A stretch of DNA of 63,946 bases, the filler included, from Octopus bimaculoides (taxonomy: Eukaryota), in the NCBI RefSeq assembly GCF_001194135.2. It is 7 parts of 7 records of this genome, joined end to end, with 100 filler letters (N's around TTAATTAATTAA, not from the genome) between each part and the next. Parts side by side here need not be neighbours in the genome. Positions count along the whole stretch, not along the records: positions 44,396 to 56,588 come from NW_026325016.1; 6 more parts are not named here. One strand, 5' to 3'. Of the stretch, positions 44,396 to 56,588 are shown one piece after another (position 1 is the stretch's first letter; each line of letters opens with the position of its first letter). Both the position numbers and the translations under genes were made by a program. The notes under the pieces are model-generated. The model saw only the letters and a program-made list of their open reading frames with translations, made no database searches and was not told the DNA's origin.

Positions 44396-45086
44396 CATCT
44401 CTCCCTCCGGAGGAGGAGGGGGGCTCTTCCACAACCAACTGTTCCAGGACCATACTCTGGTCCTGGGAACAGTTCTTTTTAATGTGGCCCGGTTCCAGGC
44501 ACAGGTGACACTTGGGGTGGGGGCGTCCCTCAAGTATCACCGGTTACCTGCAACCGGCCATTTAAAAAAAATCTGGAAAGACCAGATTCTTGACTGATTG
44601 GGTCCACAGGGTCAAAACAGCTTTTGACCCAATCCAATCAGCCGCCGGCAAAGTTTTAACATTAAGCAGCTTGGATCCGCTGCCACCCAGATCCCGGCGG
44701 ATAGTGTCTTCTATCCACTGGGGTTCTATCCTGGGTGGCAACCCGCAGGCCCAAGCTCTTGTCAACTTCTTCCCACCATACGTGGAAAGAAAGAAAATCT
44801 CTTTGCCCTCTAAGGGCTGGCTCGCAAATTTGGAAGCCTCCTCAAGGGTGTCAAATAGCAACCATACCGTTGCATACTTGACCCCCCCCCCTGGAGATGA
44901 ATTTAATAGTTGGCAAATACTCTGCCAAGTCTTTTTTTCAATTTTTGTCTTTTGAAAGAGGGCGATGGTGTCGAGCAACTTTGAGTAAGTCCTTAACACC
45001 ACCGTCCTCTCTTCAAAGTCTTTCATCCACTGTTTGGGTAGGACAATCTCCCACTCCAACGTAGTGTTGTTTATCTTTTTTGCCAT
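44396..45086 (-). mobile_element. Tx1/L1-type LINE ORF1 with CCHC zinc knuckle (frameshifted, cut by scaffold end)
   Basis: 174-aa ORF (…TRAWACGLPPRIEPQWIED…) then ILEGRPHPKCHLCLEPGHIKKNC (CX2CX4HX4C); putative 5' UTR to ~45580. Confidence 0.7.
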
Positions 45087-45789
45087 GTTTTTTTTGGGGG
45101 AAAAAAGTTCACAGAAAACAAAAGTTCACAGATTTCAAAAAAGAACAAAAATGCAGGAAGAAAGAAGACAACAAACAATTCAAAAATACAGCAAACTATT
45201 CTTCTGGCCGTCCTGGTACTCCTGGCCAACTCGGTAATCCACTTGGTAATCCAAGGCACAAAACAGTCACACAACAATTTCACCAAAAAATGGGTAAAAA
45301 AATAAGCACAATTATAGGAGGAGGGATACGCCCCCAAAACACACTTCTCACCGCTAAGTGAGATTTCTAAGCACAACTACAGGCAGACAATTTGCCCGGA
45401 ACTCAGTGGAGATTTCTTGTTCGACAAAATAAATAAACACGAACAACAAACCCCCACTGAATCCCAAAAGATCAAATGTCTTACCTTGTAGTTGTGCTTC
45501 ACTTGTTCAATAATTCACGACGTTGGTGTACGGCGTCGTGACTCCTAGCAGTGCAAAAAAACACTCACCAACGGATGCGCGGGGAAGCAAGCTTCTTACC
45601 ACACAGCCACGCCTGCGACTATATAATTAAATAAAAATACAACAATAAATAAAAAATGGAATTTTGTACATTTGAGCTAAGCTGCACAGGCTTGATATTC
45701 AATTACAAATTTACACACAATTTGAACAATAATGAAAACGATAGTTTTGTTACTTATGATCTGGTTATTCAAGCTAAAAACAATCATAT

Positions 45790-45832
45790 TTAAGGTCTGA
45801 GTTGAATCAGTTTTATTCAACTCAGACCTTAA
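45790..45832. repeat. Perfect 18-bp stem hairpin bounded by TTAA
   Basis: TTAAGGTCTGAGTTGAAT-CAGTTTT-ATTCAACTCAGACCTTAA. Confidence 0.9.
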
Positions 45833-48020
45833 TTAACCAACTATTCACTAAACTATAAATCAAGTATATTAACTCGAAATTAAAATCTTTACTGAACTAT
45901 AACCTGAGCTAAATTGTACTAAACTATAATCTAAATTAAATACTCAACTCTCTGTAGTATTTAAAATCTCACGGTAAAACTTATAAATAAAGTAACTATC
46001 GGTATCAGCAATAACAACATTTGCACCAAACCCCATGTCACTACAACATCAAATAATATGTCCATTCTTAGTGAATTGCCATTCAAATTCCTGCAATATA
46101 TTTCTCGAGAATTCACATCAGAAACGACACAGGAGACAGAAAAAAACAGAACGANNNNNNNNNNNNNNNNNNNNNNNNNNNNNNNNNNNNNNNNNNNNNN
46201 NNNNNNNNNNNNNNNNNNNNNNNNNNNNNNNNNNNNNNNNNNNNNNNNNNNNNNNNNNNNNNNNNNNNNNNNNNNNNNNNNNNNNNNNNNNNNNNNNNNN
46301 NNNNNNNNNNNNNNNNNNNNNNNNNNNNNNNNNNNNNNNNNNNNNNNNNNNNNNNNNNNNNNNNNNNNNNNNNNNNNNNNNNNNNNNNNNNNNNNNNNNN
46401 NNNNNNNNNNNNNNNNNNNNNNNNNNNNNNNNNNNNNNNNNNNNNNNNNNNNNNNNNNNNNNNNNNNNNNNNNNNNNNNNNNNNNNNNNNNNNNNNNNNN
46501 NNNNNNNNNNNNNNNNNNNNNNNNNNNNNNNNNNNNNNNNNNNNNNNNNNNNNNNNNNNNNNNNNNNNNNNNNNNNNNNNNNNNNNNNNNNNNNNNNNNN
46601 NNNNNNNNNNNNNNNNNNNNNNNNNNNNNNNNNNNNNNNNNNNNNNNNNNNNNNNNNNNNNNNNNNNNNNNNNNNNNNNNNNNNNNNNNNNNNNNNNNNN
46701 NNNNNNNNNNNNNNNNNNNNNNNNNNNNNNNNNNNNNNNNNNNNNNNNNNNNNNNNNNNNNNNNNNNNNNNNNNNNNNNNNNNNNNNNNNNNNNNNNNNN
46801 NNNNNNNNNNNNNNNNNNNNNNNNNNNNNNNNNNNNNNNNNNNNNNNNNNNNNNNNNNNNNNNNNNNNNNNNNNNNNNNNNNNNNNNNNNNNNNNNNNNN
46901 NNNNNNNNNNNNNNNNNNNNNNNNNNNNNNNNNNNNNNNNNNNNNNNNNNNNNNNNNNNNTTATACTTGGTCGGTAGACATGAGAATATTTTCATTTTCA
47001 GCTTACATAGTTGTATTTAAGATATTTATGTGGTGAAATATATTAGCCAAATATTCAAGCTTTTGAGATCAAAAATTTATTTCGAAAAAGTTCTTTAAAA
47101 GAAGAAAATGAAAAACGAGGAGGAGGGGTGGGAGGAGGAGGAGGGGTGAGAGGAGGAGGTGGTTATCTTAATCATTTTTTTTTTTTACAAACGAATACAG
47201 AACCCTTAATAGAGCTTACTACCAATGAAAAAGCTCCATTAGTACAAATTCCAAGATAATATCCATTTGTTGATGTTGTTATTTTGAGTGCGTGATACTA
47301 TTACCGGGGCATATTTACTGCAAGTTAAATACCTCTTCTTCTCTGGCTGCTTCCTACAAGATCCAAATGGATTCATTAAATTTTGAAGTCGACTAGCAGG
47401 CTGTCTTAATGCAGACACCCGTTTCTTGGGCATGTCTGTCACGTGCAGACAGTTACAGAATTTTCCTCGTCGCCGTTTCTTTCTGACAGTCCCAGTGCAT
47501 CTTGGCGACAATAATCATATTACTGGTGCAGCCACAAGTTAGAGTCACAGACTCGGCAGGGGTTTCAATCCTGCATCATTTTGCAGGTGAATTCGTGTTC
47601 TGAGTTTTCTTCGGTTTCTGGGAAAATTCATTAGGCTGCAAGTGACCGCAACAGATTTGCCTACCCATGATCGTGAATGTTATTTGTGTTGCTTTACGTG
47701 CGTGACAAAACATCACACATAAGGTGTTTAATTGACATAAGTATCTAAATTCCTATACTATCTCTCATTTTTGAACAGGAGATAAAAAACGGATATATGT
47801 CATCGGAAACTTACCGAACTGTATGAAAACACTGTATACCCAATTGAGACAGAATGAAACTAAAATCGCCACCTGTGTATCATTATAAATCTACTTACAC
47901 CGATATAAGGCAAGGCATGATGCTTGTAATTGTCTGAGATAGAATCTCAGCATACTAATACATCTGTTTGTTGTCTACACCACCTGCCTTCGTCTTCTGT
48001 TTTTTTTGTGTGAATTCTCT

Positions 48021-48090
<70 letters not shown>

Positions 48091-48110
48091 TTATATATAA
48101 ATATTATATA

Positions 48111-49673
48111 CAGTATCTCACAGAAGTATGTACACCCCTAAAAAAATTCAGTAAAATTGCCATTACTCTGATAATATTGAGGGAAATCAAACGAAATTTA
48201 TACTGAATAAAATATATTATACATGCAAGCATTATACAAATTTGGAACACAAAGCAATAAACATTTTCAAATATATGAACGAAATATTAATTTTCAAACG
48301 ATACAAAATTATGTACCCACTAAAAGATTATTATTTATATTCAATATTTGGTGAGACCGCCATTGCTTTCAGTGACTGTATTGAGTCTTCTGGGCATAGT
48401 GTCAACTAAACTTTTGCATATAACCGATGAAATCTACCTCTATTTCTCCTGAATGATACCTTTCAACTGTGTTACATTGCGGGGTTCTTTCTCCTCACCT
48501 TCCTTTTCAAAACACCCCACAGATGTTCTAATGAGTTTAAATCAGGTAACATGGTAGGCCAAGGCAATGGCTTCACCTTTTTTATCTGATAAAATCTTAG
48601 TCGTCATCTTTGAAGTGCGTTTAAGGTCATTATCATGTTGGACCATGGAACGTCTTCCTAGTTTCTGCAATGTCACAATAAAGTCTTGAATCCATTGTTC
48701 TCTCAATAAATGTAAGTCCCCCCCACACCAGCCTCACCCATGCATCCCCAAAGCATAACATTTCCGCCGCCGTGTTTCACGGTAGGCACGGTGCATTTGT
48801 CGCTATTATCTTCACCTGGTTATCACCATACTCGTTTAATACCACCTGACCCAAACAAGTTGATTTTAGTCGCGTCAGATAAAAGAATTTTATTCCAAAA
48901 CTCCTTCACCTTACTGACATAGGTTTCGGCAAAAATAGATGACTTCATTTATGCCTGGTCATGAGGAGAGGCCTCCTACGAGGAATGCGTCCATAAAGAC
49001 CGCACTGATTCAAACTTCGGCGAACTGTTTGGGCGGATACACCTTTCCAATAACGTTGGATGTGGCGAATATCACGCGCAGTTAAAATAGAAGGACGACA
49101 TGGAGACCTGGACGATGTTTATTGCTTAGCCGTCCAGTAGCTTTGTACTTCTGAGTTACTTTGGTAACTGTGTTTGCGCTAATACGTATTCGTTTGCTAA
49201 TTAACTTGTGTCCTAAACCTTCTTGTGCAAATTAAAAATAATTTTCTTCAAATCTTCTGACAATTCGTTTCCTTTTGGTGACATTTTAATCAGAATGATT
49301 TTCACCATGGTACACAAATCAGAATTCTTGCAGATGCAATAACAATGATCAGCGCAAAAATGCCAGGAAAAATAATTTATTAGTATTGAAATTATCAGCA
49401 ATATCTGAATTTAGTAAAAACAAAAAAGTGGATAAAATATTGAATATAGCAAATTTCCTTTAGGGTGTACATATTTTTGTAACGTTTGAAAATTAATATT
49501 TCGTTCATATCTTTGAAAATGTTTATTGTTTTGTGCACCAAATTTGGATAATGTTTGCATGTATAATATATATTATTCAGTATAAATCTCGTTTGATTTC
49601 CTTCAATATTATCACAATAATGCCAATTTTACTGAAATTTGTTTAAGAGTGTACATACTTCTGTGAGATACTG
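48111..49673 (-). mobile_element. Full-length Tc1-family transposon, ~225-bp IR/DR-type TIRs, TA target duplication, dead transposase
   Basis: TA-CAGTATCTCACAGAAGTATGTACAC...GTGTACATACTTCTGTGAGATACTG-TA; MSPKGNELSEDLKK, ILLSDATKINLFGS, TVKHGGGNVMLWGCM, QHDND, PDLNSLEHLW. Confidence 0.95.
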
Positions 49674-49982
49674 TATATATTTATATATTCTTTTGTTAGT
49701 TATACTTTAGCGTTTGAAACTGTTGAATTTGTTCCAGTCTATAAGATTTATACTTTCTAAGTCATTCGACACGAGTTGGAGTCGTTCTATTTATTTTTTG
49801 CATTTGTCTCAATATGCTTAATGAGATAGTTTACTAAACGATTCAGCAGCGCTTCTACTCTCTTGCTATAACAACGTTTTTACTTTGTCGCTCTGTTTGT
49901 CTTCTGGATTTGAAAGTTAATTCTAAATGCTTACTAATCGTCTCTTACGTTTGTGTGTATATTTGTATACATATATGTATTA

Positions 49983-50024
<42 letters not shown>

Positions 50025-50084
50025 CGTGCGTGCGTGTGTGTGTGAGTATATGTTTGTATATATAAATATGTGTGTCTATGTTTG

Positions 50085-50270
50085 TGCTTGTTCCTCATCG
50101 TCACTTAACAAACTGTGTTGCTTTGTTTATGTCCCCGTAAATTAAGCGGCTCGACATAAAGAGATCGATAGAATAAGTACCGAACTTAAAAATAAGAACT
50201 GGGATCAATCTGTTCAACAAAACTTTGAAAGTTGTGTTCCAGCGTGGTCGCAGTCCAAGGATTAAAACAA
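50085..50270 (+). mobile_element. SINE 3' part
   Basis: GTTTATGTCCCCGTAAATTAAGCGG...GATAGAATAAGTAC...CCAGCGTGGTCGCAGTC. Confidence 0.65.
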
Positions 50271-50769
50271 GTTACCACGAAGCTCTGTTAATGTTTGCAT
50301 TGACATTTTACCTTGTTCCTTCATTGATCAACCTATGCTTTTTTTAGATATGGTCATTTTTTTCAACTGCTCTTGGTCATTTGTTTCTTTGATAAGTTTT
50401 TCGAGATGCCCGACAAAAGTAATAGGCGTCGATATCAGAAACTACACACTAATTCATATGTTGGAATAAGGAAGTGATGTTTGCTTATAGTTAAACTATC
50501 TCGACAAGAATATAGGTCTGGAGGGTGAAGAGAATCTAGTAGTGACCTGGAGCATTATTAAACAACAGTTTTGTGCTCAAGATCATGTTCTTCACAATAT
50601 CTTCCCGCTGCTACACAAAAGTATGATACAAACTCCATTTTGAAATTTTCTATTGTCATCTAGTTCTATCAATTTAATGTCCAAATCACAGGCAGATGCA
50701 TTTCTGATGTTTTCCTTATTAGTTCATTGGTTTAAATTGTTTCTTGTAGTATAACTACTAAGTAGTCTA

Positions 50770-51270
50770 GTACTTATGTTGAAAAACGATATTTTCTGAT
50801 CTTAGACATAGAGGCTGGCTTTTATTTCTTTTCAGGTGATAAAAGTGTGGAGTAAGTTTCTTTTCCAGAAAGTGGTCTACGATGAAACAGAGACAACTTC
50901 TGGGAAAGAAGACAGTTAAGGAACTTCTCCATACTTTCAAAAGTATTATCAAGCACGGCAGCTAATATCCCCAACCTCTAACTTGAATATACATGTCGTG
51001 AAGGGTAGCTGCCACGTTTTATTATACTTTTAAGAATCTCGAAAACTTTCTTGACTATTTGGGTGCCTAAGAATTTCCAGTTTCATTAGAGATACTGATG
51101 CTGTGTAGGTGACACCGTTGGTTTGCTTCTATCAAACAGATCTCTGCCAGCTGTGAATCTTTCCGAATTATTGACACTTTCATATTTTTAGATTTTTAAA
51201 GATGCTCCTTGCTCTTCCATGATGAAGATTGACTTAGCAGTTTTGTTTCTTCCACCAATGTCGCAAGTAT
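50770..51270 (-). mobile_element. Tigger/pogo transposase relic
   Basis: IME.ARSIFKNLK...RFTAGRDLFDR (CENP-B HTH end) and TTFWKRNLLHTFIT*KE (after the DET motif), with frameshifts. Confidence 0.55.
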
Positions 51271-51500
51271 ACCTACCATTTTCCCATAAATATTACTCTT
51301 TCAACAAGTCAACTTCTTTACTGATAACCATGAGGTTATCATAGCAGAAGCTTATATTTTGTCCGCATTCTTCTCACGGTGAGTCTAATCGTTGACGTGT
51401 CCCAGTTTAAAGGCTTACTAACATATAACTGACGTTCGTGATCGTCCAGTCACTTCAACCCTTGCAATCTAAGATGTGACTTTACCTCGACACATTAGGT

Positions 51501-51780
51501 CAGTGGTTCCCAGATATTTTCAGGTTGCCGCTCCCTTGGCAAGCAGGCCACTTTCCTAGCGCCCCGCCTCTTCCTCATCACCACCACAAATATGGACTTA
51601 TTTTTTCAGCAAATTCAGAACAACTGTATTTTATAAATATTACTTAACCTAATTAACCCATTTTTTAAATATACACTGCTCGCTTTTGGTTAAACCATTA
51701 TCGCTCCACTTTTCTTCAACGCTCCCTGGATCTTTTCACTGTCTCCAGCAGGGCAGTACTGCCCACTGTCGGAACCACTG
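51501..51780. mobile_element. 280-bp hAT (Buster/Charlie-type) MITE
   Basis: TIRs CAGTGGTTCC / GGAACCACTG; 8-bp TSD CATTAGGT / CATTAGAT with central TA. Confidence 0.85.
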
Positions 51781-52126
51781 CATTAGATGAACTTTCGCTT
51801 CAAGTTTCACATTTATGCGGTAGCAGACAGTTTAACAGTAACGAAAAAGCTCAAGTTTTTAGTCATCTTTCGTTTGCTTTTCTTATCCTTTCTATAGTTA
51901 TGCATTTTTTTGCACTACAAATTTTATTCGCCCTTCAGATTGTTATTACCAGTGCTTGCTTCAGGTGTGACTCAAGGATGGGGACTTTCACACCAAGGTA
52001 TGCAACTGTACAGTCTTTGATGAGTTTATCTAATATATATAGTTTTCCATCCATGGCTACATACACACACCTGCTCATACGCACACTTGCTCATACACAC
52101 ACCTGCTCATACACACACCTGCTCAT

Positions 52127-52157
<31 letters not shown>

Positions 52158-52369
52158 AGGTTTCCTTTTAGTGTTTGACCGTTACTTTAAAATGGTACAG
52201 TACACACAACCCGAAAACCATGCTCTACCCTGTGCGTATTCCTTATTCAAACTCCCATCTCTAAGTACAAAAACAGCAAAAACAGTCCCTTATTCCGCTC
52301 ATTAAGCTCCCAGTTTTCAAGCGAAAATTTACTGGTATGTAGAGTTTCTTTCTGTATTATTTCTTACCC

Positions 52370-53420
52370 GTCCTGTGATACTTAAAAATGGCTAACATTG
52401 TTTCCTGCAATTTGGAAACAAAGGTCCAGAGATTAGCTTGAAAAAGGAGAATATGTGTTTCCCTTCCTTGAAGCTTTAAATTTAGTTTATTCAGCTGGTC
52501 GAAAATGTCAAGGTACGCAACCCTTTTATTCCATGCTTCATCTTCGAAGTGAGCTACAAGATCTTTCTTTTCTTGAACCTCCAGGAATAGCTTTATTTCA
52601 TCTTTCATCTTTCATCTGGAAGACACGATTAACAACATGCCCTTTCTATAACCAACATACTTCTACGTAGAAAAGAAGGACTTCGTGGTCAGTATTCATG
52701 TCTTTACGTAGTTCTTTGAATAGCCGCGTATTGAGTGCTGCAGCTTTCACATAATTTACAATTTTGATTACAGAATCAAGCACTTCCTGCAAAGAGGCAT
52801 GGAGAGTCTTACTGACGAGAACATATCGGTGGATCATGCAGTGGATACCTTTGACTTGATGTACTAGCTTCTTCATTCTCGACAAGACTTCTGACTTCGA
52901 TCCCAGCGTAGCCAGTACTCCATCCGTACAAAACCCACACGTTTTCCCGTTGAAGGCCTTCCTCATGGAAAAAATTTTAAACTTTTACCATGACATCATC
53001 AGATTTTGTAGTGGTTTCAAGTGCACTGCAGAACAAGAATTCGTCTTTAATGTCACCTGAATGATTGTATCTCACGAAGACAAGCGACTGAGAACATGAA
53101 CTTACATCTGTTGACTCGTCGAGCTCAAAGGAGAACAGAGACGCCTTGATTTTGGTCAGAACCTACTCCTTCACATCCATAGACATTTTAGAAATGCGCC
53201 TCTTTATAGTAATATTTGACGGGACTACTTGCTGCATCTTCTTTTCACTGGCTTCTCCAAGAATAAGATTTACTGCTTTCAATATGCATGGTTTTAGAAG
53301 AATTTTTCCAATCGTGTGACACTTTTTTTCTTTAGCAATTTCCAATGCAATTTCATATGAGGCTTCCACTAAGGCTGGTGAATACGGACTTGTCTTTCCA
53401 GGGGCAAAGTTAAAAGTTCT
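52370..53420 (-). mobile_element. hAT Buster/Charlie-type transposase relic
   Basis: EASYEIALEIAKEKKCHTIG, FELDESTDVSSCSQRLVFVRY, CTDG, HCMIHR, LFYVEVCWL, AYL-DIFDQLNKLNLKLQG; stops and frameshifts. Confidence 0.92.
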
Positions 53421-54473
53421 CCCAAACGACTTGGTTAATGAATTATTCTTTTATTATTTCGTAATCCTTCAGCGTAGCACAAAATATAGATTTGCGATTC
53501 TTAAATTATTTGCTAGGGGCTATTTACAATATTGACCATGTATAGTTCTGACAACTACATCATTTCAAAGTTCACCTAGTGACAGTGTTGACTGATATTT
53601 GTTCATGTTGCCGTCCAATTCTTCAACATCAGTCATGAAGACAAAAATGTTAAGATGATACTATAAGATATAAGTTTAGCAGTTGTTATGTATTCCAAAG
53701 TCAATATCAATAAACAAAAGAAAGTGGGGTATGATGTGAGGGATATTCGGTTGTTATTTGTAGCTATATGAATAACACAGCCAAAAAGTGGATTGAAGAA
53801 GGGCATTGTTGGGATGAAGAACAGATCTGGTAGGTTGCAGAAAGCTCCTGAGAAGGCAAAGAATGCAGCTAAGAAAAAAAAGCATGAAACATGAATGTGT
53901 AACTGAAAGCGAGGTTCTAACTTCTATGGATATTTTGCCACATTGTGTAAGAACAGCACTGAAAATCCTTGGATATGAGCAAAGAGTTGCAAGAAATAAG
54001 CCAATGATTTTAAAATCCAATACGACCAAAAGTTTCAGCTGAACTAAAATGTTCTGTAACAAAGAAAACAAATGTTACTTATCTATAATATGGTCTAATA
54101 ACAGCAATTCCTGCCAGTTTTTGCAATTCTATGCAGATATATATTGTGGTTCGTCTTTCGGTGGTGGAATGGATCAGATATAATTATAATTTTTAACATA
54201 ACCACAAAACTGCAACCTTATGATGAAGAAATAGTTGATTAAAATCTACTTCAGTATTTAATTAGTGCTTATTTTACCAATCTGAATATGCTTGAACACT
54301 GAACGGAAATATACATAACTGAATACAGCTAGACATTTTGTTTACTGTTTCATTAATTGTGCCATTAGCAGCTGTTGTATATATATTCATATTAACAGCA
54401 ACAGTAAAATGGTAGTGATGATATTACTACTACTATCACAGTACGATACCGAAATGACTGTCACATTCATTGA

Positions 54474-54481
54474 TGACGTCA
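54474..54481. promoter_or_regulatory. Palindromic CRE (TGACGTCA) ~90 bp upstream of ATG 54571
   Basis: ATGACGTCAT at 54473-54482; motif only. Confidence 0.25.
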
Positions 54482-54570
54482 TAGTTGAAAGTGAATCATT
54501 ATTGAATAATTTAGTTTTATTTCTCTGCATTGAGAATCAATTTGAATTGACCAGCACGAATACCACAGAA

Positions 54571-56588
54571 ATGGCTGACCGTTCACAATATCCAGACGAA
54601 TTAGAGCTTGCTAGATCACGTCAGCTACACAGTCCACAATATGCATCAGAATATCACTTCAATGTAAGACCATCACACCTACATCGAAATTTACTAGAAC
54701 CTGACAATGCAGATCAAGCACAGGGATCATCATATGCATCAGCACGTCGTTCCATGTCTCCGTATTTGTCACGACATTCTCTACCACGCTGGAGCAGATC
54801 AATGCCATCATTTCGAGATGATTTATATCGCACTTATCCATTGAGTCTTGCAACTCGTACAGAACAGGCACCCATATTTCTACATAATTTAACCTATCAA
54901 GGGTACCCTACTGCCTACACAACACCATCACCGCATGGACCGCAACGTCTATCTGAACAACAAGTATCTCCTCTCGTAACATGGGACCCTGATACTTCGA
55001 GACGGAGTCGTGATATTTCAAGGTATGAGCCAAGCACGCCATCAGAATATAGGGCGAGAAGTTTTCATAGATTCAGTACATCACCGATAGAAGAAACAGA
55101 ATACCGTCATGCTCTCTTGGATAGCTTTAGGCATAGCACACCACAACGACAGAGAACATCAAGTTTTCGTATCAGAAGTCCATTAACATTTCGTCATCAT
55201 CGTAGTTCGAGTTCTGAACAAAGCCCATCGTCCCGATATTCGTTACCAAGACCACTTCGAAGCAGGTCAGAGGAATATAGGGTACGTGACTTTCAAACAA
55301 CAGATACAATTTCTGATCTTGGAGAATTTGTAAATCTAGTATCTCCTGACACTTCGAGAAGGACTCGTGATGCTGACGACTATTTAGCAGCATTCGGAGA
55401 AGAGGCACATAATCTAGATTCGTCAAGTGGGTCATGTTTTTCAGATTTTATCGGTGAAGTTGAACCTCTGTCAGCGAATGAAATAAGGTCTCATCCTTTA
55501 AACAGACTGTGGGATAGAGCATTTTATCGGCGATATCCTCGAAGCCAGAGAGTTGCGGCAATTAGACATGAAATGCCAAACATTGAACAGTGTGTATTCG
55601 AACAACAAATACCTCTTGACGCAACGCGGGATTCTGACACAACGCGGGATCCTGACACAACGCGGGACACTGATGTAATGCGGGACCCTGACACTTCCAG
55701 ACGAGACCTTGCCATTTCCAGACGAGACCCTGACACTTCCAGAGGAGACCCTGACACTTCCAGAGGAGACCCTGACACTTCCAGAGGAGACTCTGACACT
55801 TCCAGAGGAGACCCTGACACATCCAGACGAACTCGTGATTCTGAAGAATCTTTGGCAGCATTTGGAGAAGATGCACGTAGTCCAGATTCGTCAAGTGGTA
55901 CATGTTTTTCAGATTATATCGGTATAACAGAACCTCTGTCCGCGGAGGAAATAAGGTCTCACCCCTTAAACAGAGTATGGGNNNNNNNNNNNNNNNNNNN
56001 NNNNNNNNNNNNNNNNNNNNNNNNNNNNNNNNNNNNNNNNNNNNNNNNNNNNNNNNNNNNNNNNNNNGATCCTGAAACAACGCGGGACACTGATGCAACG
56101 CGGGACCCTGACACTTCCAGAGGAGACCCTGACACTTCCAGAGGAGACCCCGACACTTCCAGAGGAGACCCTGACACTTCCAGAGGAGACTCTGACACTT
56201 CCAGAGGAGACCCTGACACTTCCAGACGAACTCGTGATTCTGAAGAATCTTTGGCAGCATTTGGAGAAGATGCACGTAGTCCAGATTCGTCAAGTGGTAC
56301 ATGTTTTTCAGATTATATCGGTATAACAGAACCTCTGTCCGCGGAGGAAATAAGGTCTCACCCCTTAAACAGAGTATGGGATAGAACATTTTATCGGCGA
56401 TATCCTCGAAGCCAGAGAGTTGCGGTAATTAGACATGAAATGCCAAACGTTGAACAATGTGTATTTGAACAACAAATATCTCCTGACGCAACGCGGGATT
56501 CTGACACAACGCGGGATCCTGAAACAACGCGGGACACTGATGCAACGCGGGACCCTGACACTTCCAGAGGAGACCCTGACACTTCCAG
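54571..56588 (+). CDS. Uncharacterised lysine-free R/S/D/T/P-rich protein with nested tandem repeats; C-terminus missing
   Basis: Stop-free frame from 54409 to the scaffold end (one 86-N gap); GAAATGG context at 54571; three ~75-aa modules separated by TRDPDT/RGDPDTS repeats; no Lys. Confidence 0.75.
55346..56588 (+). repeat. Higher-order coding tandem repeat (~450-bp units containing 18- and 21-bp subrepeats)
   Basis: CCCTGACACTTCCAGAGGAGA (21 nt) and ACGCGGGATCCTGACACA (18 nt) subunits; 55822-55981 identical to 56221-56380. Confidence 0.95.

What the first reader, a model, noticed from the sequence alone, without database searches (positions are those of the whole stretch)
55346..56588. 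Novel ~75-aa module repeated at least three times, spaced by expanding 6- and 7-aa repeats
Seen: the module LAAFGE..DSSSG.CFSD.IG..EPLSA.EIRSHPLNR.WDR.FYRRYPRSQRVA.IRHEMPN.EQCVFEQQI recurs with both Cys, the Trp and HPLNR conserved. Linkers are TRDPDT and RGDPDTS arrays of variable copy number, and all length changes keep frame. Copies 2 and 3 are identical over 160 bp; copy 1 is diverged by substitutions (about 7 synonymous, more nonsynonymous), so purifying selection is not shown from these copies alone. I do not recognise the module. Inference: an actively expanding, possibly length-polymorphic lineage-specific domain whose array broke the assembly.
Basis: partly seen in the sequence, partly recalled or inferred. 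Interest (0 to 1): 0.7.

Follow-up and report, generated by a model that had tools for sequence, protein, structure and literature searches.

The report
Octopus orphan gene with repeated module
The repeats are real and lie in the coding exon of a fast-evolving gene found so far only in octopuses, in which the family's conserved tail module has been copied in tandem and left the assembly unfinished; what the protein does is unknown.

Summary
One reading frame is open from 54571 (MADRSQYPDE) to the piece end, with 0 stops against 9-64 in the other five frames. It carries the module at 55348-55611, 55816-55981 (cut by the gap) and 56215-56478. Linkers are 18-bp and 21-bp repeat arrays.

The two sides of the gap are not continuous. 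By homology with copy 3, at least 134 nt are missing, against 86 N written. Both counts keep the frame. The 521-bp right-hand block is one 447-bp unit plus a 74-bp identical overlap, which suggests a collapsed tandem array.

The module matches nothing in Pfam or PDB, and AlphaFold2 gives no confident fold. It is not unique, though. A scan of 1.84 billion proteins gave three hits, all Octopus "hypothetical" or "SRRM2-like" proteins. The piece is collinear at 88-94% DNA identity with O. vulgaris chromosome OX597818.1, where the ortholog is annotated at 1378 aa.

The module is the family's C-terminal region. The heptads are slippage copies of its own DPDTSR motif. Constraint is weak (dN/dS 0.13-0.5). 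Function is only inferred: a Ser/Arg-rich, lysine-free, disordered intracellular scaffold.

This is a new member of an unnamed, taxon-restricted family, of modest interest.

The parts
53713..54570 (+). Conserved 5' flank (promoter or 5'UTR) shared by the gene family
   Evidence: 78% DNA identity to the stretch directly upstream of O. vulgaris P0001 and 81% to that upstream of O. sinensis P0002. 91.5% to the O. vulgaris ortholog over 53368-54884. The last ~270 bp are 95-97% identical to the ortholog, more than the coding part.
54571..56588 (+). Coding exon of the gene, from the family-conserved start MADRSQYPDE to the end of the piece; no stop codon reached. The frame is open from 54319, with in-frame upstream ATGs at 54409 and 54454; the latter is the annotated start of the O. 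vulgaris ortholog
   Evidence: 0 stops in this frame against 9-64 in the other five. The start aligns with MADHSQYPD of P0001-P0004 and with P0003's annotated start. The first 104 codons are 83% identical to the O. vulgaris ortholog, dN/dS 0.50. 0 Lys codons in 643 codons against about 22 expected per 470.
54958..55014 (+). First copy of the family motif QQVSPLVTWDPDTSRRSRD, not followed by a recognisable module
   Evidence: 86-91% DNA identity to the four copies of the motif in the O. sinensis P0002 gene and 81% protein identity over 21 residues. The sequence after it is not significantly like the module: 22 of 300 shuffles score as high.
55270..55347 (+). Family motif EEYRVRDFQTT..EFVNLVSP that precedes the module
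   Evidence: Matches EQYRVRDFQTT..QEFEKQV.PFVTW of P0002.
55348..55611 (+). Module copy 1 (DTSRRTRD..LAAFGE..EQCVFEQQI), the diverged edge copy of the array
   Evidence: 81% amino-acid identity to copy 3. 29 of the 33 nucleotide differences fall before 55520. 45% identity to the O. vulgaris P0001 modules.
55612..55815 (+). Linker 1: four 18-bp hexads ([ST]RDPDT type) followed by six 21-bp heptads (DPDTSRG type)
   Evidence: Tandem Repeats Finder rows 55617-55694 and 55684-55827. Net charge -7 over 68 aa.
55816..55981 (+). Module copy 2, first 55 residues only, cut by the gap
   Evidence: Identical to copy 3 over 160 bp; 1 mismatch (55821) over 229 bp.
55982..56067 (.). Assembly gap (86 N) inside the array; true content is at least 134 nt by homology with 56381-56514
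   Evidence: plus counting on the sequence.
56068..56214 (+). Linker B, 5' part: end of the hexads plus five heptads
   Evidence: 56068-56141 is exactly identical to 56515-56588, which sets the tandem period at 447 bp = 149 aa. One heptad fewer than linker 1, plus substitutions.
56215..56478 (+). Module copy 3, complete
   Evidence: 47% identity to the P0001 modules by tblastn.
56479..56588 (+). Linker B, 3' part, running into the end of the piece (N)
   Evidence: Tandem Repeats Finder row 56482-56561; identical overlap with 56068-56141.

Best explanation
SHOWN. The finding is the 3' part of one long coding exon of an octopus gene. The piece is orthologous to Octopus vulgaris chromosome OX597818.1 at about 93.95 Mb, where the corresponding gene is annotated with a 1378-aa product. 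The gene belongs to an unnamed family known so far only from Octopus. Its genes sit in tandem clusters. Those read here in full are single-exon; the O. sinensis P0002 model appears to hold one intron (span 3982 nt for 1134 aa). The family shares:
- a conserved 5' flank;
- a conserved start, MAD[HR]SQYPD;
- Ser/Arg-rich low-complexity sequence;
- a (T)WDPDTSR.SRD motif;
- in some members, a roughly 90-residue module next to that motif. Short paralogs carry this module once, at the very C-terminus.

In this gene the module plus its linker has been amplified as a 447-bp (149-aa) tandem unit.

INFERRED FROM THE SEQUENCE. The 21-bp heptads (DPDTSRG) are slippage copies of the module's own DPDTSR(R) motif. 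The 18-bp hexads are an older array of the same peptide theme. The array evolves in concert by unequal crossing-over or gene conversion: the inner copies are nearly identical and the edge copy is diverged. That near-identity is why the short-read assembly collapsed it, leaving a gap and a scaffold end inside it.

INFERRED FUNCTION, LOW CONFIDENCE. There is no signal peptide at the conserved start. Composition is S 15%, R 14%, no lysine. Acidic linkers (net -7 to -9) alternate with an Arg-rich, helix-prone core (SHPLNRVWDRTFYRRYPRSQRVAVIRH, 8 Arg and 1 Asp). The product is therefore most likely an intracellular, largely disordered, multivalent scaffold of the RS-domain or condensate type. Each module would add one more copy of a short binding element, so copy number would tune valency.
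For: Coding:
- 0 stops in frame against 9-64 in the other frames.
- Frame-specific absence of Lys codons: 0 against 15 and 20 in the other two frames, 22 expected.
- Substitutions are biased to the third codon position: 16 against 9 and 8.

Orthology:
- Window 48489-54884 is collinear with L003 13788-21932 at 88-94% DNA identity.
- The first 104 codons are 83% identical, dS 0.13, dN/dS 0.50.
- The ortholog product is 1378 aa.

Family:
- Only 3 hits in 1.84e9 proteins, all Octopus: E 2e-47, 2e-19 and 1e-8. P0004 adds a fourth.
- Tandem arrangement, single-exon for the O. vulgaris genes.
- Shared 5' flank.
- The module lies at the extreme C-terminus of P0003 and of the O. sinensis ORF L002:20519-21694; hhalign probability 87%, E 4.5e-6.
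- The module is independently arrayed in O. vulgaris P0001, with different linkers and periods of 180 and 116 aa.

Array mechanics:
- 447-bp period and 74-bp identical ends of the right-hand block.
- Divergence falls from about 17% to about 4% to 0% from the edge inwards.
- Heptad codons gac cct gac act tcc aga gga against the motif gac cct gac aca tcc aga cga at 55810.

Constraint: dN/dS 0.13-0.29 among P0001 modules and 0.40-0.46 among the window modules.

Composition and charge.
Against: - No expression, localisation or interaction data were reachable, so the functional part is inference from composition alone.
- AlphaFold2 gives only low-confidence short helices, pLDDT 56-60. The module may be a conserved disordered segment and not a binding domain.
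- Between paralogous modules of different species, dN/dS is 0.6-0.95. That is close to neutral.
- Low dN/dS within arrays can be inflated or deflated by gene conversion.
- The two Cys are not conserved in P0003 or in the O. sinensis paralog.
- The O. vulgaris ortholog could be read only for its first 147 residues. That it also carries the array is inferred from its length.
- Copy number here rests on an unfinished assembly.
Confidence: 0.75

Rival explanations
1. Assembly artefact. The block 56068-56588 is a redundant copy (an alternative haplotype or an unresolved overlap) of linker 1 plus copy 2. Only two modules would then be real and nothing is 'expanding'.
For: Copy 2 and copy 3 differ by 1 base in 229. 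The block is short (521 bp), is bounded by N on both sides, and its two ends are identical over 74 bp. The gap length is only an estimate.
Against: The linker upstream of copy 3 differs from the one upstream of copy 2 by a 21-bp indel and 8 substitutions within about 210 bp, while the next 160 bp are identical. The block carries the same B-type linker on both sides of its module, which needs at least two consecutive B-type junctions. The O. vulgaris ortholog is 1378 aa, about 670 aa longer than what is assembled here. The paralog P0001 has four modules in a chromosome-level assembly.
Confidence: 0.12
2. A non-functional or decaying sequence: a minisatellite whose unit happens to lack stops, or a pseudogenised family member drifting neutrally.
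For: dN/dS between species' paralogous modules is 0.6-0.95 and 0.5 for the orthologous N-terminus. No confident fold. The gene lacks the roughly 300-370-aa acidic N-terminal region present in P0001-P0004. The fourth module of P0001 is cut by a frameshift.
Against: The 813-nt non-repetitive part is also free of stops, 0 against 6-29 in other frames. Lys codons are absent only in this frame. The O. vulgaris ortholog has the same short N-terminus and is annotated as a 1378-aa open gene. dN is below dS in every within-array comparison. The 5' flank is better conserved than neutral DNA.
Confidence: 0.1
3. A secreted adhesive or matrix protein. Translation starts at the upstream ATG 54409 (MVVMILLLLSQ.., a short hydrophobic leader), and the heptads display repeated RGD integrin-binding tripeptides.
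For: 10 RGD tripeptides in the visible linkers. An in-frame upstream ATG is followed by 8 hydrophobic residues and is conserved in O. vulgaris.
Against: RGD is an automatic by-product of the DPDTSRG repeat. Paralogs have no RGD and no hydrophobic leader. In O. vulgaris the stretch reads MVVMILLPLP, with two prolines. The 100 bp upstream of that ATG, outside any ORF, are equally conserved, which points to UTR or promoter. The O. vulgaris annotation starts downstream at MTVTF. The composition (RS-rich, few Cys) is not that of a typical matrix protein.
Confidence: 0.05
4. An ORF of a transposable element or a satellite family.
For: The piece is full of transposable-element debris: a gag-like ORF with a weak CCHC knuckle at 44396-45086, and microsatellites.
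Against: No transposable-element domain in the ORF or its homologues. Only a handful of copies exist, in conserved syntenic positions. The family-specific 5' flank and start codon are conserved. Nothing similar occurs elsewhere in the piece.
Confidence: 0.02

Closest known systems
Octopus vulgaris CAI9722905.1 (P0001, 927 aa), CAI9722906.1 (P0003, 461 aa) and the unnamed 1378-aa gene at OX597818.1 ~93.956 Mb; Octopus sinensis XP_036359032.1 (P0002, 'serine/arginine repetitive matrix protein 2-like')
   Same: They share the start MAD[HR]SQYPD, the 5' flank, a single-exon coding layout (P0002's gene model excepted), the WDPDTSR.SRD motif and S/R-rich composition. P0001 and P0003 also carry the Cys/Trp module, at 39-45% identity, and P0001 has it in a tandem array. 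The 1378-aa gene is the positional ortholog, 83% identical over the N-terminus.
   Different: The window gene and its ortholog lack the roughly 300-370-aa acidic N-terminal region of the paralogs. The linkers are DPDTSRG and TRDPDT micro-repeats, not the 90-aa P/S-rich spacers of P0001. The period is 149 aa, against 180 and 116 aa. P0002 has no Cys module at all. None of these proteins has a described function.
RS-domain proteins such as SRRM2 (nuclear-speckle scaffolds); comparison from general knowledge
   Same: Long, disordered, Ser/Arg-rich sequence with internal repeats: 26 RS/SR dipeptides in 470 aa. NCBI's pipeline gave that name to the paralog.
   Different: No cwf21 or any other Pfam domain, and no sequence homology. 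The name reflects composition only. The acidic DPDTSRG linkers and the Cys/Trp module have no counterpart in SRRM2.
Coding minisatellites and tandem-unit proteins that evolve in concert (for example involucrin, mucin VNTRs, PRDM9 finger arrays); comparison from general knowledge
   Same: An in-frame tandem unit, near-identical inner copies, diverged edge copies, nested short repeats made by slippage, copy-number change between relatives, and assembly collapse.
   Different: The unit here is 149 aa and holds a conserved non-repetitive module specific to an octopus family. Polymorphism between individuals was not tested.
Reflectins, the best-known cephalopod-restricted repeat proteins; comparison from memory, not tested
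   Same: Taxon-restricted genes that are mostly intronless, tandemly clustered and repeat-bearing, with unusual composition.
   Different: No similarity in sequence or composition. Reflectins are Met/Tyr/Asp-rich with their own motif, and none was hit in the protein searches.

Membership tests
Unnamed Octopus MADHSQYPD / WDPDTSR gene family (P0001-P0004 and relatives) | Significant sequence similarity of the product to family members | tested here: met
   phmmer E 2e-47 (P0001), 2e-19 (P0002) and 1e-8 (P0003) against 1.84e9 proteins. tblastn gives 83% over 108 aa to the O. vulgaris ortholog.
Unnamed Octopus MADHSQYPD / WDPDTSR gene family (P0001-P0004 and relatives) | Conserved start MAD[HR]SQYPD preceded by a homologous 5' flank | tested here: met
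   Window 54571 MADRSQYPDE. The flank 53713-54568 is 78-81% identical to the paralogs' flanks and 91-97% to the ortholog's.
Unnamed Octopus MADHSQYPD / WDPDTSR gene family (P0001-P0004 and relatives) | WDPDTSR.SRD motif, in some members followed by the ..SG.CFSD..H.LNR.W..FY..MP[ND]I[EK]Q.. module | tested here: met
   The motif occurs at 54982-55014 and at the start of every module. Module alignment A2 has invariant DTSR..RD, G, FS and S. hhalign to the O. sinensis paralog gives E 4.5e-6.
Unnamed Octopus MADHSQYPD / WDPDTSR gene family (P0001-P0004 and relatives) | Coding sequence in one exon, genes in tandem clusters | tested here: inconclusive
   The visible 2 kb is one uninterrupted frame, but the 3' end is missing. 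No paralog lies within the 10 kb upstream in this piece. In O. vulgaris the ortholog has P0004 and a 798-aa member within 17 kb.
SRRM2 / RS-domain splicing scaffolds | N-terminal cwf21 domain (or, for SR proteins, an RRM) plus an RS domain | tested here: not met
   No Pfam family at E <= 1 in the window ORF and none significant in P0001-P0003. Only the RS-rich composition is shared.
Cys/His metal-binding or disulfide mini-domains | Invariant Cys/His ligand set across homologues | tested here: not met
   Only 2 Cys per module. Both are replaced in P0003 (S and R) and absent in the O. sinensis paralog.
Transposable-element ORFs | Reverse transcriptase, integrase, transposase or gag domain; many dispersed copies | tested here: not met
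   No such Pfam hit. Three representatives in the whole protein library. Syntenic single locus.
Any structurally known fold | Confident model with a significant Foldseek or PDB sequence match | tested here: not met
   pLDDT 59.7 and 55.8. Best Foldseek match to PDB has E 8.4. phmmer and hmmsearch against PDB give 0 hits at E <= 10. With so shallow an alignment this does not prove that no fold exists.

The most novel reading that the evidence does not exclude
An Octopus-restricted family encodes a previously undescribed ~90-residue module. The module is repeatedly and independently amplified into in-frame arrays in different genes and species. In this gene the array forms a lysine-free protein with alternating acidic and basic blocks and species-variable valency, a candidate lineage-specific condensate or scaffold protein tied to some octopus-specific cell biology.
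Probability: 0.3. Interest if true: 0.5.

Novelty: new member of a known kind. Interest (0 to 1): 0.35.

Why it matters
Cephalopod genomes are known for lineage-restricted genes whose roles are mostly unknown. This one gives a clean, testable example. It is a small family with a conserved start, flank and tail module. It has independent module arrays in at least two genes, strong avoidance of lysine, and copy number that probably differs between species and perhaps between individuals.

On the practical side, it marks a place where short-read octopus assemblies are collapsed. Gene models there will be truncated or missing.

It does not open a long-standing question, and no function can yet be attached. 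Its value is mainly as an annotation correction and as a candidate for expression and localisation studies.

Tried and rejected
- Pfam on the window ORF and on the Octopus homologues gave nothing significant.
- PDB sequence searches with the single protein and with the module profile gave 0 hits.
- AlphaFold2 on 3- and 7-row module alignments gave low confidence. Foldseek against PDB was meaningless, E 8.4.
- The word-indexed protein search found nothing with the window protein. It also found nothing with the module alignment, although P0001 is in that collection. I treat this as a limit of the index, not as evidence of absence. With P0001 as query it returned only P0001 itself and P0004.
- An older, degenerate module after the first WDPDTSRRSRD motif (54982 onward) is not supported: 22 of 300 shuffles score as high.
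- I first read O. sinensis P0002 as the positional ortholog, because of the shared 5' flank at 77-81%. I rejected that once the O. vulgaris L003 locus proved collinear at 88-94% over 6.4 kb with an 83%-identical N-terminus.
- Exact-sequence look-ups of two mechanical ORFs of the piece, meant to name the species, found nothing.
- Literature searches by accession, by peptide strings and by topic returned nothing relevant.
- The AP2/EH-type motifs (DPF, NPF) seen in the O. vulgaris P0001 linkers are not conserved in the window gene (EPL in place of DPF). I dropped them as a functional lead.
- The rest of the O. vulgaris ortholog could not be fetched, because the look-up tool needs an exact protein and the flank limit is 10 kb.
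Full report
**What is in the sequence**

The piece 44396-56588 looks eukaryotic. GC is about 35%, rising to 42-46% over the finding. It holds microsatellites, transposable-element debris and three N runs.

One plus-strand frame is open from 54319 to the end of the piece. Over 54571-56588 that frame has no stop. The other two plus frames have 22 and 64, and the minus frames have 20, 9 and 42. In the non-repetitive 54571-55383 the counts are 0 against 6-29.

- Copy 1: 55348-55611.
- Copy 2: 55816-55981, first 55 residues only.
- Copy 3: 56215-56478.

The linkers are an 18-bp array (4.3-4.4 copies) followed by a 21-bp array (6.9 against 5.9 copies). The only length difference between the two linkers is one 21-bp heptad.

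**The gap, tested first**

The left flank stops one base after ..HPLNRVW. The right flank starts in the hexad part of a linker (DPETTRD..), so the two sides are not continuous.

In copy 3 the stretch between those two points is 56381-56514, which is 134 nt. The gap is written as 86 N. Both numbers are 2 mod 3, and the period (447) is divisible by 3. The frame therefore holds under the nominal length, under a one-unit fill, and with any number of extra units. This is an inference from homology, not an observation. The frame on each side is set independently by homology to the module and by the absence of stops.

The right-hand block (56068-56588, 521 bp) equals one 447-bp period plus a 74-bp exact overlap of its two ends. 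That is the pattern expected when near-identical tandem units collapse in a short-read assembly.

The block is not just a second copy of the left contig:
- Its linker differs from linker 1 by a 21-bp indel and 8 substitutions.
- The following 160 bp are identical.

An alternative-haplotype origin cannot be excluded without reads.

**Divergence and selection within the array**

| Comparison | Differences or measure |
|---|---|
| Copy 1 vs copy 3 | 33 differences in 264 nt |
| By codon position 1 / 2 / 3 | 9 / 8 / 16 |
| Synonymous / nonsynonymous | about 13 / about 20 |
| dN/dS | 0.40 |
| Fisher test | p = 0.023 |

Twenty-nine of the 33 differences lie before 55520. From there inward, divergence to the B-type unit is about 4% and then 0%. 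A diverged edge and homogenised interior is what concerted evolution of a tandem array looks like.

**Relatives**

Several searches found nothing:
- Pfam.
- PDB sequences.
- The word-indexed protein search.

A full HMMER scan of 1.84 billion representative proteins returned three hits. All are Octopus:
- O. vulgaris CAI9722905 (P0001, 927 aa, E 2e-47).
- O. sinensis XP_036359032, "SRRM2-like" (P0002, 1134 aa, E 2e-19).
- O. vulgaris CAI9722906 (P0003, 461 aa, E 1e-8).

A fourth O. vulgaris member, P0004, came from the last indexed search.

All begin with, or contain near the start, MADHSQYPD, matching window MADRSQYPDE at 54571. Their further features:
- P0001 carries four modules in tandem. 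Its spacers are quite different and its periods are 180 and 116 aa. The last module is cut by a frameshift.
- P0003 ends with a single module.
- An ORF next to P0002 in O. sinensis (L002:20519-21694) ends with a diverged module: hhalign probability 87%, E 4.5e-6.
- P0002 has the WDPDTSRWSRDFEDS motif but no module.

The module is therefore the C-terminal region of the family, amplified in some genes. The two Cys are replaced in P0003 and missing in the O. sinensis paralog, so they are not an obligatory metal or disulfide site.

**The ortholog**

The locus fetched around P0004 (L003, O. vulgaris OX597818.1 at 93.93-93.96 Mb) is collinear with window 48489-54884 at 88-94% DNA identity. Its last gene call starts at L003:21490, has a 1378-aa product, and runs off the locus.

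Its first residues are MTVTFIDDVIVESKS..EMADRSQYPDDLNEELELATSRQL... This is 83% identical to the window protein over 108 residues. For those codons dS is 0.13, dN is 0.066 and dN/dS is 0.50.

From this I infer that the window comes from an Octopus species about 10% diverged from O. vulgaris in neutral DNA. The gene is conserved and annotated there. About 670 further residues, room for four or five more 149-aa units, are probably missing from this piece.

My earlier idea that P0002 is the positional ortholog was wrong. The 77-81% flank similarity is a family feature. The 270 bp upstream of 54571 are 95-97% identical between the two species, more than the coding part, and this holds outside any ORF. 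That fits a promoter or 5'UTR.

**Origin of the linkers**

These points can be read directly from the sequence.

The heptad codons are gac cct gac act tcc aga gga. They repeat the module's own leading motif, gac cct gac aca tcc aga cga act cgt gat (DPDTSRRTRD) at 55810. That motif is the family-wide WDPDTSR.SRD. The heptads are therefore slippage copies of a conserved motif.

The hexads (gat cct gac aca acg cgg, DPDTTR) spell nearly the same peptide with different Thr/Ser and Arg codons. They are more diverged, with 80-82% matches against 91-96%, so they form an older array. The ten RGD tripeptides are a by-product of the heptad.

**Nature of the product**

AlphaFold2 on the module gave mean pLDDT 59.7 with 3 rows and 55.8 with 7 rows. 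Only short helices were predicted, in the C-terminal half, at pLDDT about 66-73. Foldseek found nothing.

Composition and charge:
- S 15%, R 14%, D 9%, P 8%, T 7%, with 26 RS/SR dipeptides in 470 residues.
- Not one lysine in 643 codons, against 88 arginines. The other two frames hold 15 and 20 Lys codons, and about 22 are expected from base composition.
- The linkers are acidic, net -7 and -9.
- The module core SHPLNRVWDRTFYRRYPRSQRVAVIRH has 8 Arg and 1 Asp, counted on the sequence.
- There is no signal peptide at the conserved start.

I infer an intracellular, largely disordered, block-charged, multivalent protein of the RS-domain or scaffold type, in which module number sets valency. I put this functional reading at roughly 0.3. 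The structural and evolutionary account I put at about 0.8.

**Constraint**

dN/dS is 0.13-0.29 among P0001 modules, 0.40-0.46 among window modules, and 0.50 for the orthologous N-terminus. It is 0.6-0.95 between paralogous modules of different species, where dS is 0.5-0.75.

The gene is coding and weakly constrained, typical of fast-evolving disordered proteins. Gene conversion makes the within-array values unreliable as absolute measures.

**Rivals**

| Rival | Confidence | Main argument |
|---|---|---|
| Redundant-contig artefact, only two real modules | about 0.12 | The linker differences and the long ortholog argue against it |
| Neutral or pseudogene sequence | about 0.10 | The open non-repetitive part, frame-specific lysine avoidance and an open ortholog argue against it |
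| Secreted RGD protein starting at ATG 54409 | about 0.05 | Paralogs lack both RGD and a hydrophobic leader, and O. vulgaris has prolines in the leader |
| Transposable-element ORF | about 0.02 | No such domain, few copies, syntenic position |

**Verdict**

Three corrections apply. The module is not unseen, because it is the tail region of a small Octopus gene family already present in databases as hypothetical proteins. The gene has an annotated ortholog. A folded domain is not shown.

Novelty: a new member of a known general kind, a taxon-restricted gene for a disordered protein that evolves by tandem repeats. Interest 0.35.

Noticed in passing
window 54571-56586 (ORF frame): No lysine codon in 643 codons, against 88 Arg. 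The other two frames hold 15 and 20 AAA/AAG, and about 22 are expected per 470 codons. The paralogs, and even the first 108 residues of the O. vulgaris ortholog, do contain some Lys.
   Followed up: partly
window 54300-54570 vs L003 21330-21606: The ~270 bp upstream of the conserved ATG are 95-97% identical to O. vulgaris. That is more than the coding sequence (~91%) or the surrounding non-coding DNA (88-90%), and includes bases outside any ORF. It is probably a conserved promoter or 5'UTR. In-frame upstream ATGs at 54409 and 54454 are conserved too.
   Followed up: partly
window 54569-54604 vs L002 10014-11618: Compared with paralogs P0001-P0004, the window gene and its O. vulgaris ortholog lack the roughly 300-370-aa acidic N-terminal region. 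YPD(E) runs almost directly into LELARSRQL. The O. vulgaris ortholog has 4 extra residues (DLNE) here.
   Followed up: partly
L001 12632-12899 (O. vulgaris P0001 3' end): The fourth module of P0001 stops at ..DPFSAE, and its remainder continues in another frame just after the stop codon. This is a frameshifted terminal repeat, or an assembly error, in the O. vulgaris array.
   Followed up: partly
L002 20519-21694 (O. sinensis): A 391-aa ORF lies downstream of P0002. It has the family start (MADHNQY) and a diverged module at its very C-terminus. It was not among the called genes listed for that locus.
   Followed up: partly
L003 4107-6503 (-) and 10001-11932 (+): Two more family members lie head-to-head within 17 kb upstream of the ortholog in O. 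vulgaris: a 798-aa gene and P0004. No counterpart of P0004 is present in window 44396-48488. That stretch is not collinear with O. vulgaris and holds an 806-N gap.
   Followed up: partly
window 44396-45086 (-): A gag-like ORF of 174 aa is followed by a weak CCHC zinc knuckle (Pfam zf-CCHC, E 9e-4, below cut-off) that is cut by the edge of the piece. It looks like retroelement debris.
   Followed up: partly
window 52357-53369 (-): Three short ORFs on the minus strand look by eye like fragments of a hAT/ZBED-type transposase. Pfam gave no hit. The stretch is also present in the orthologous O. vulgaris region (L003 16405-19026), so the insertion is old.
   Followed up: partly
window 53368-53376 vs L003 19026-20413: O. 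vulgaris has about 1.4 kb here that the window lacks. It includes an 82-aa gene call on the minus strand. This is an insertion in O. vulgaris or a deletion in the window species.
   Followed up: no
window 55562-56389 (-): A 275-aa antisense ORF (LLWKCQG repeats) runs through the linkers and across the N gap. It exists only because the reverse complement of the heptad has no stop, and it ends outside the repeats.
   Followed up: yes
window 46155-46960; 48024-48110; 49958-50060; 52092-52157: An 806-N assembly gap, a (TA)n microsatellite and two (CA/TG)n microsatellites. The latter match many places in the Octopus loci.
   Followed up: no
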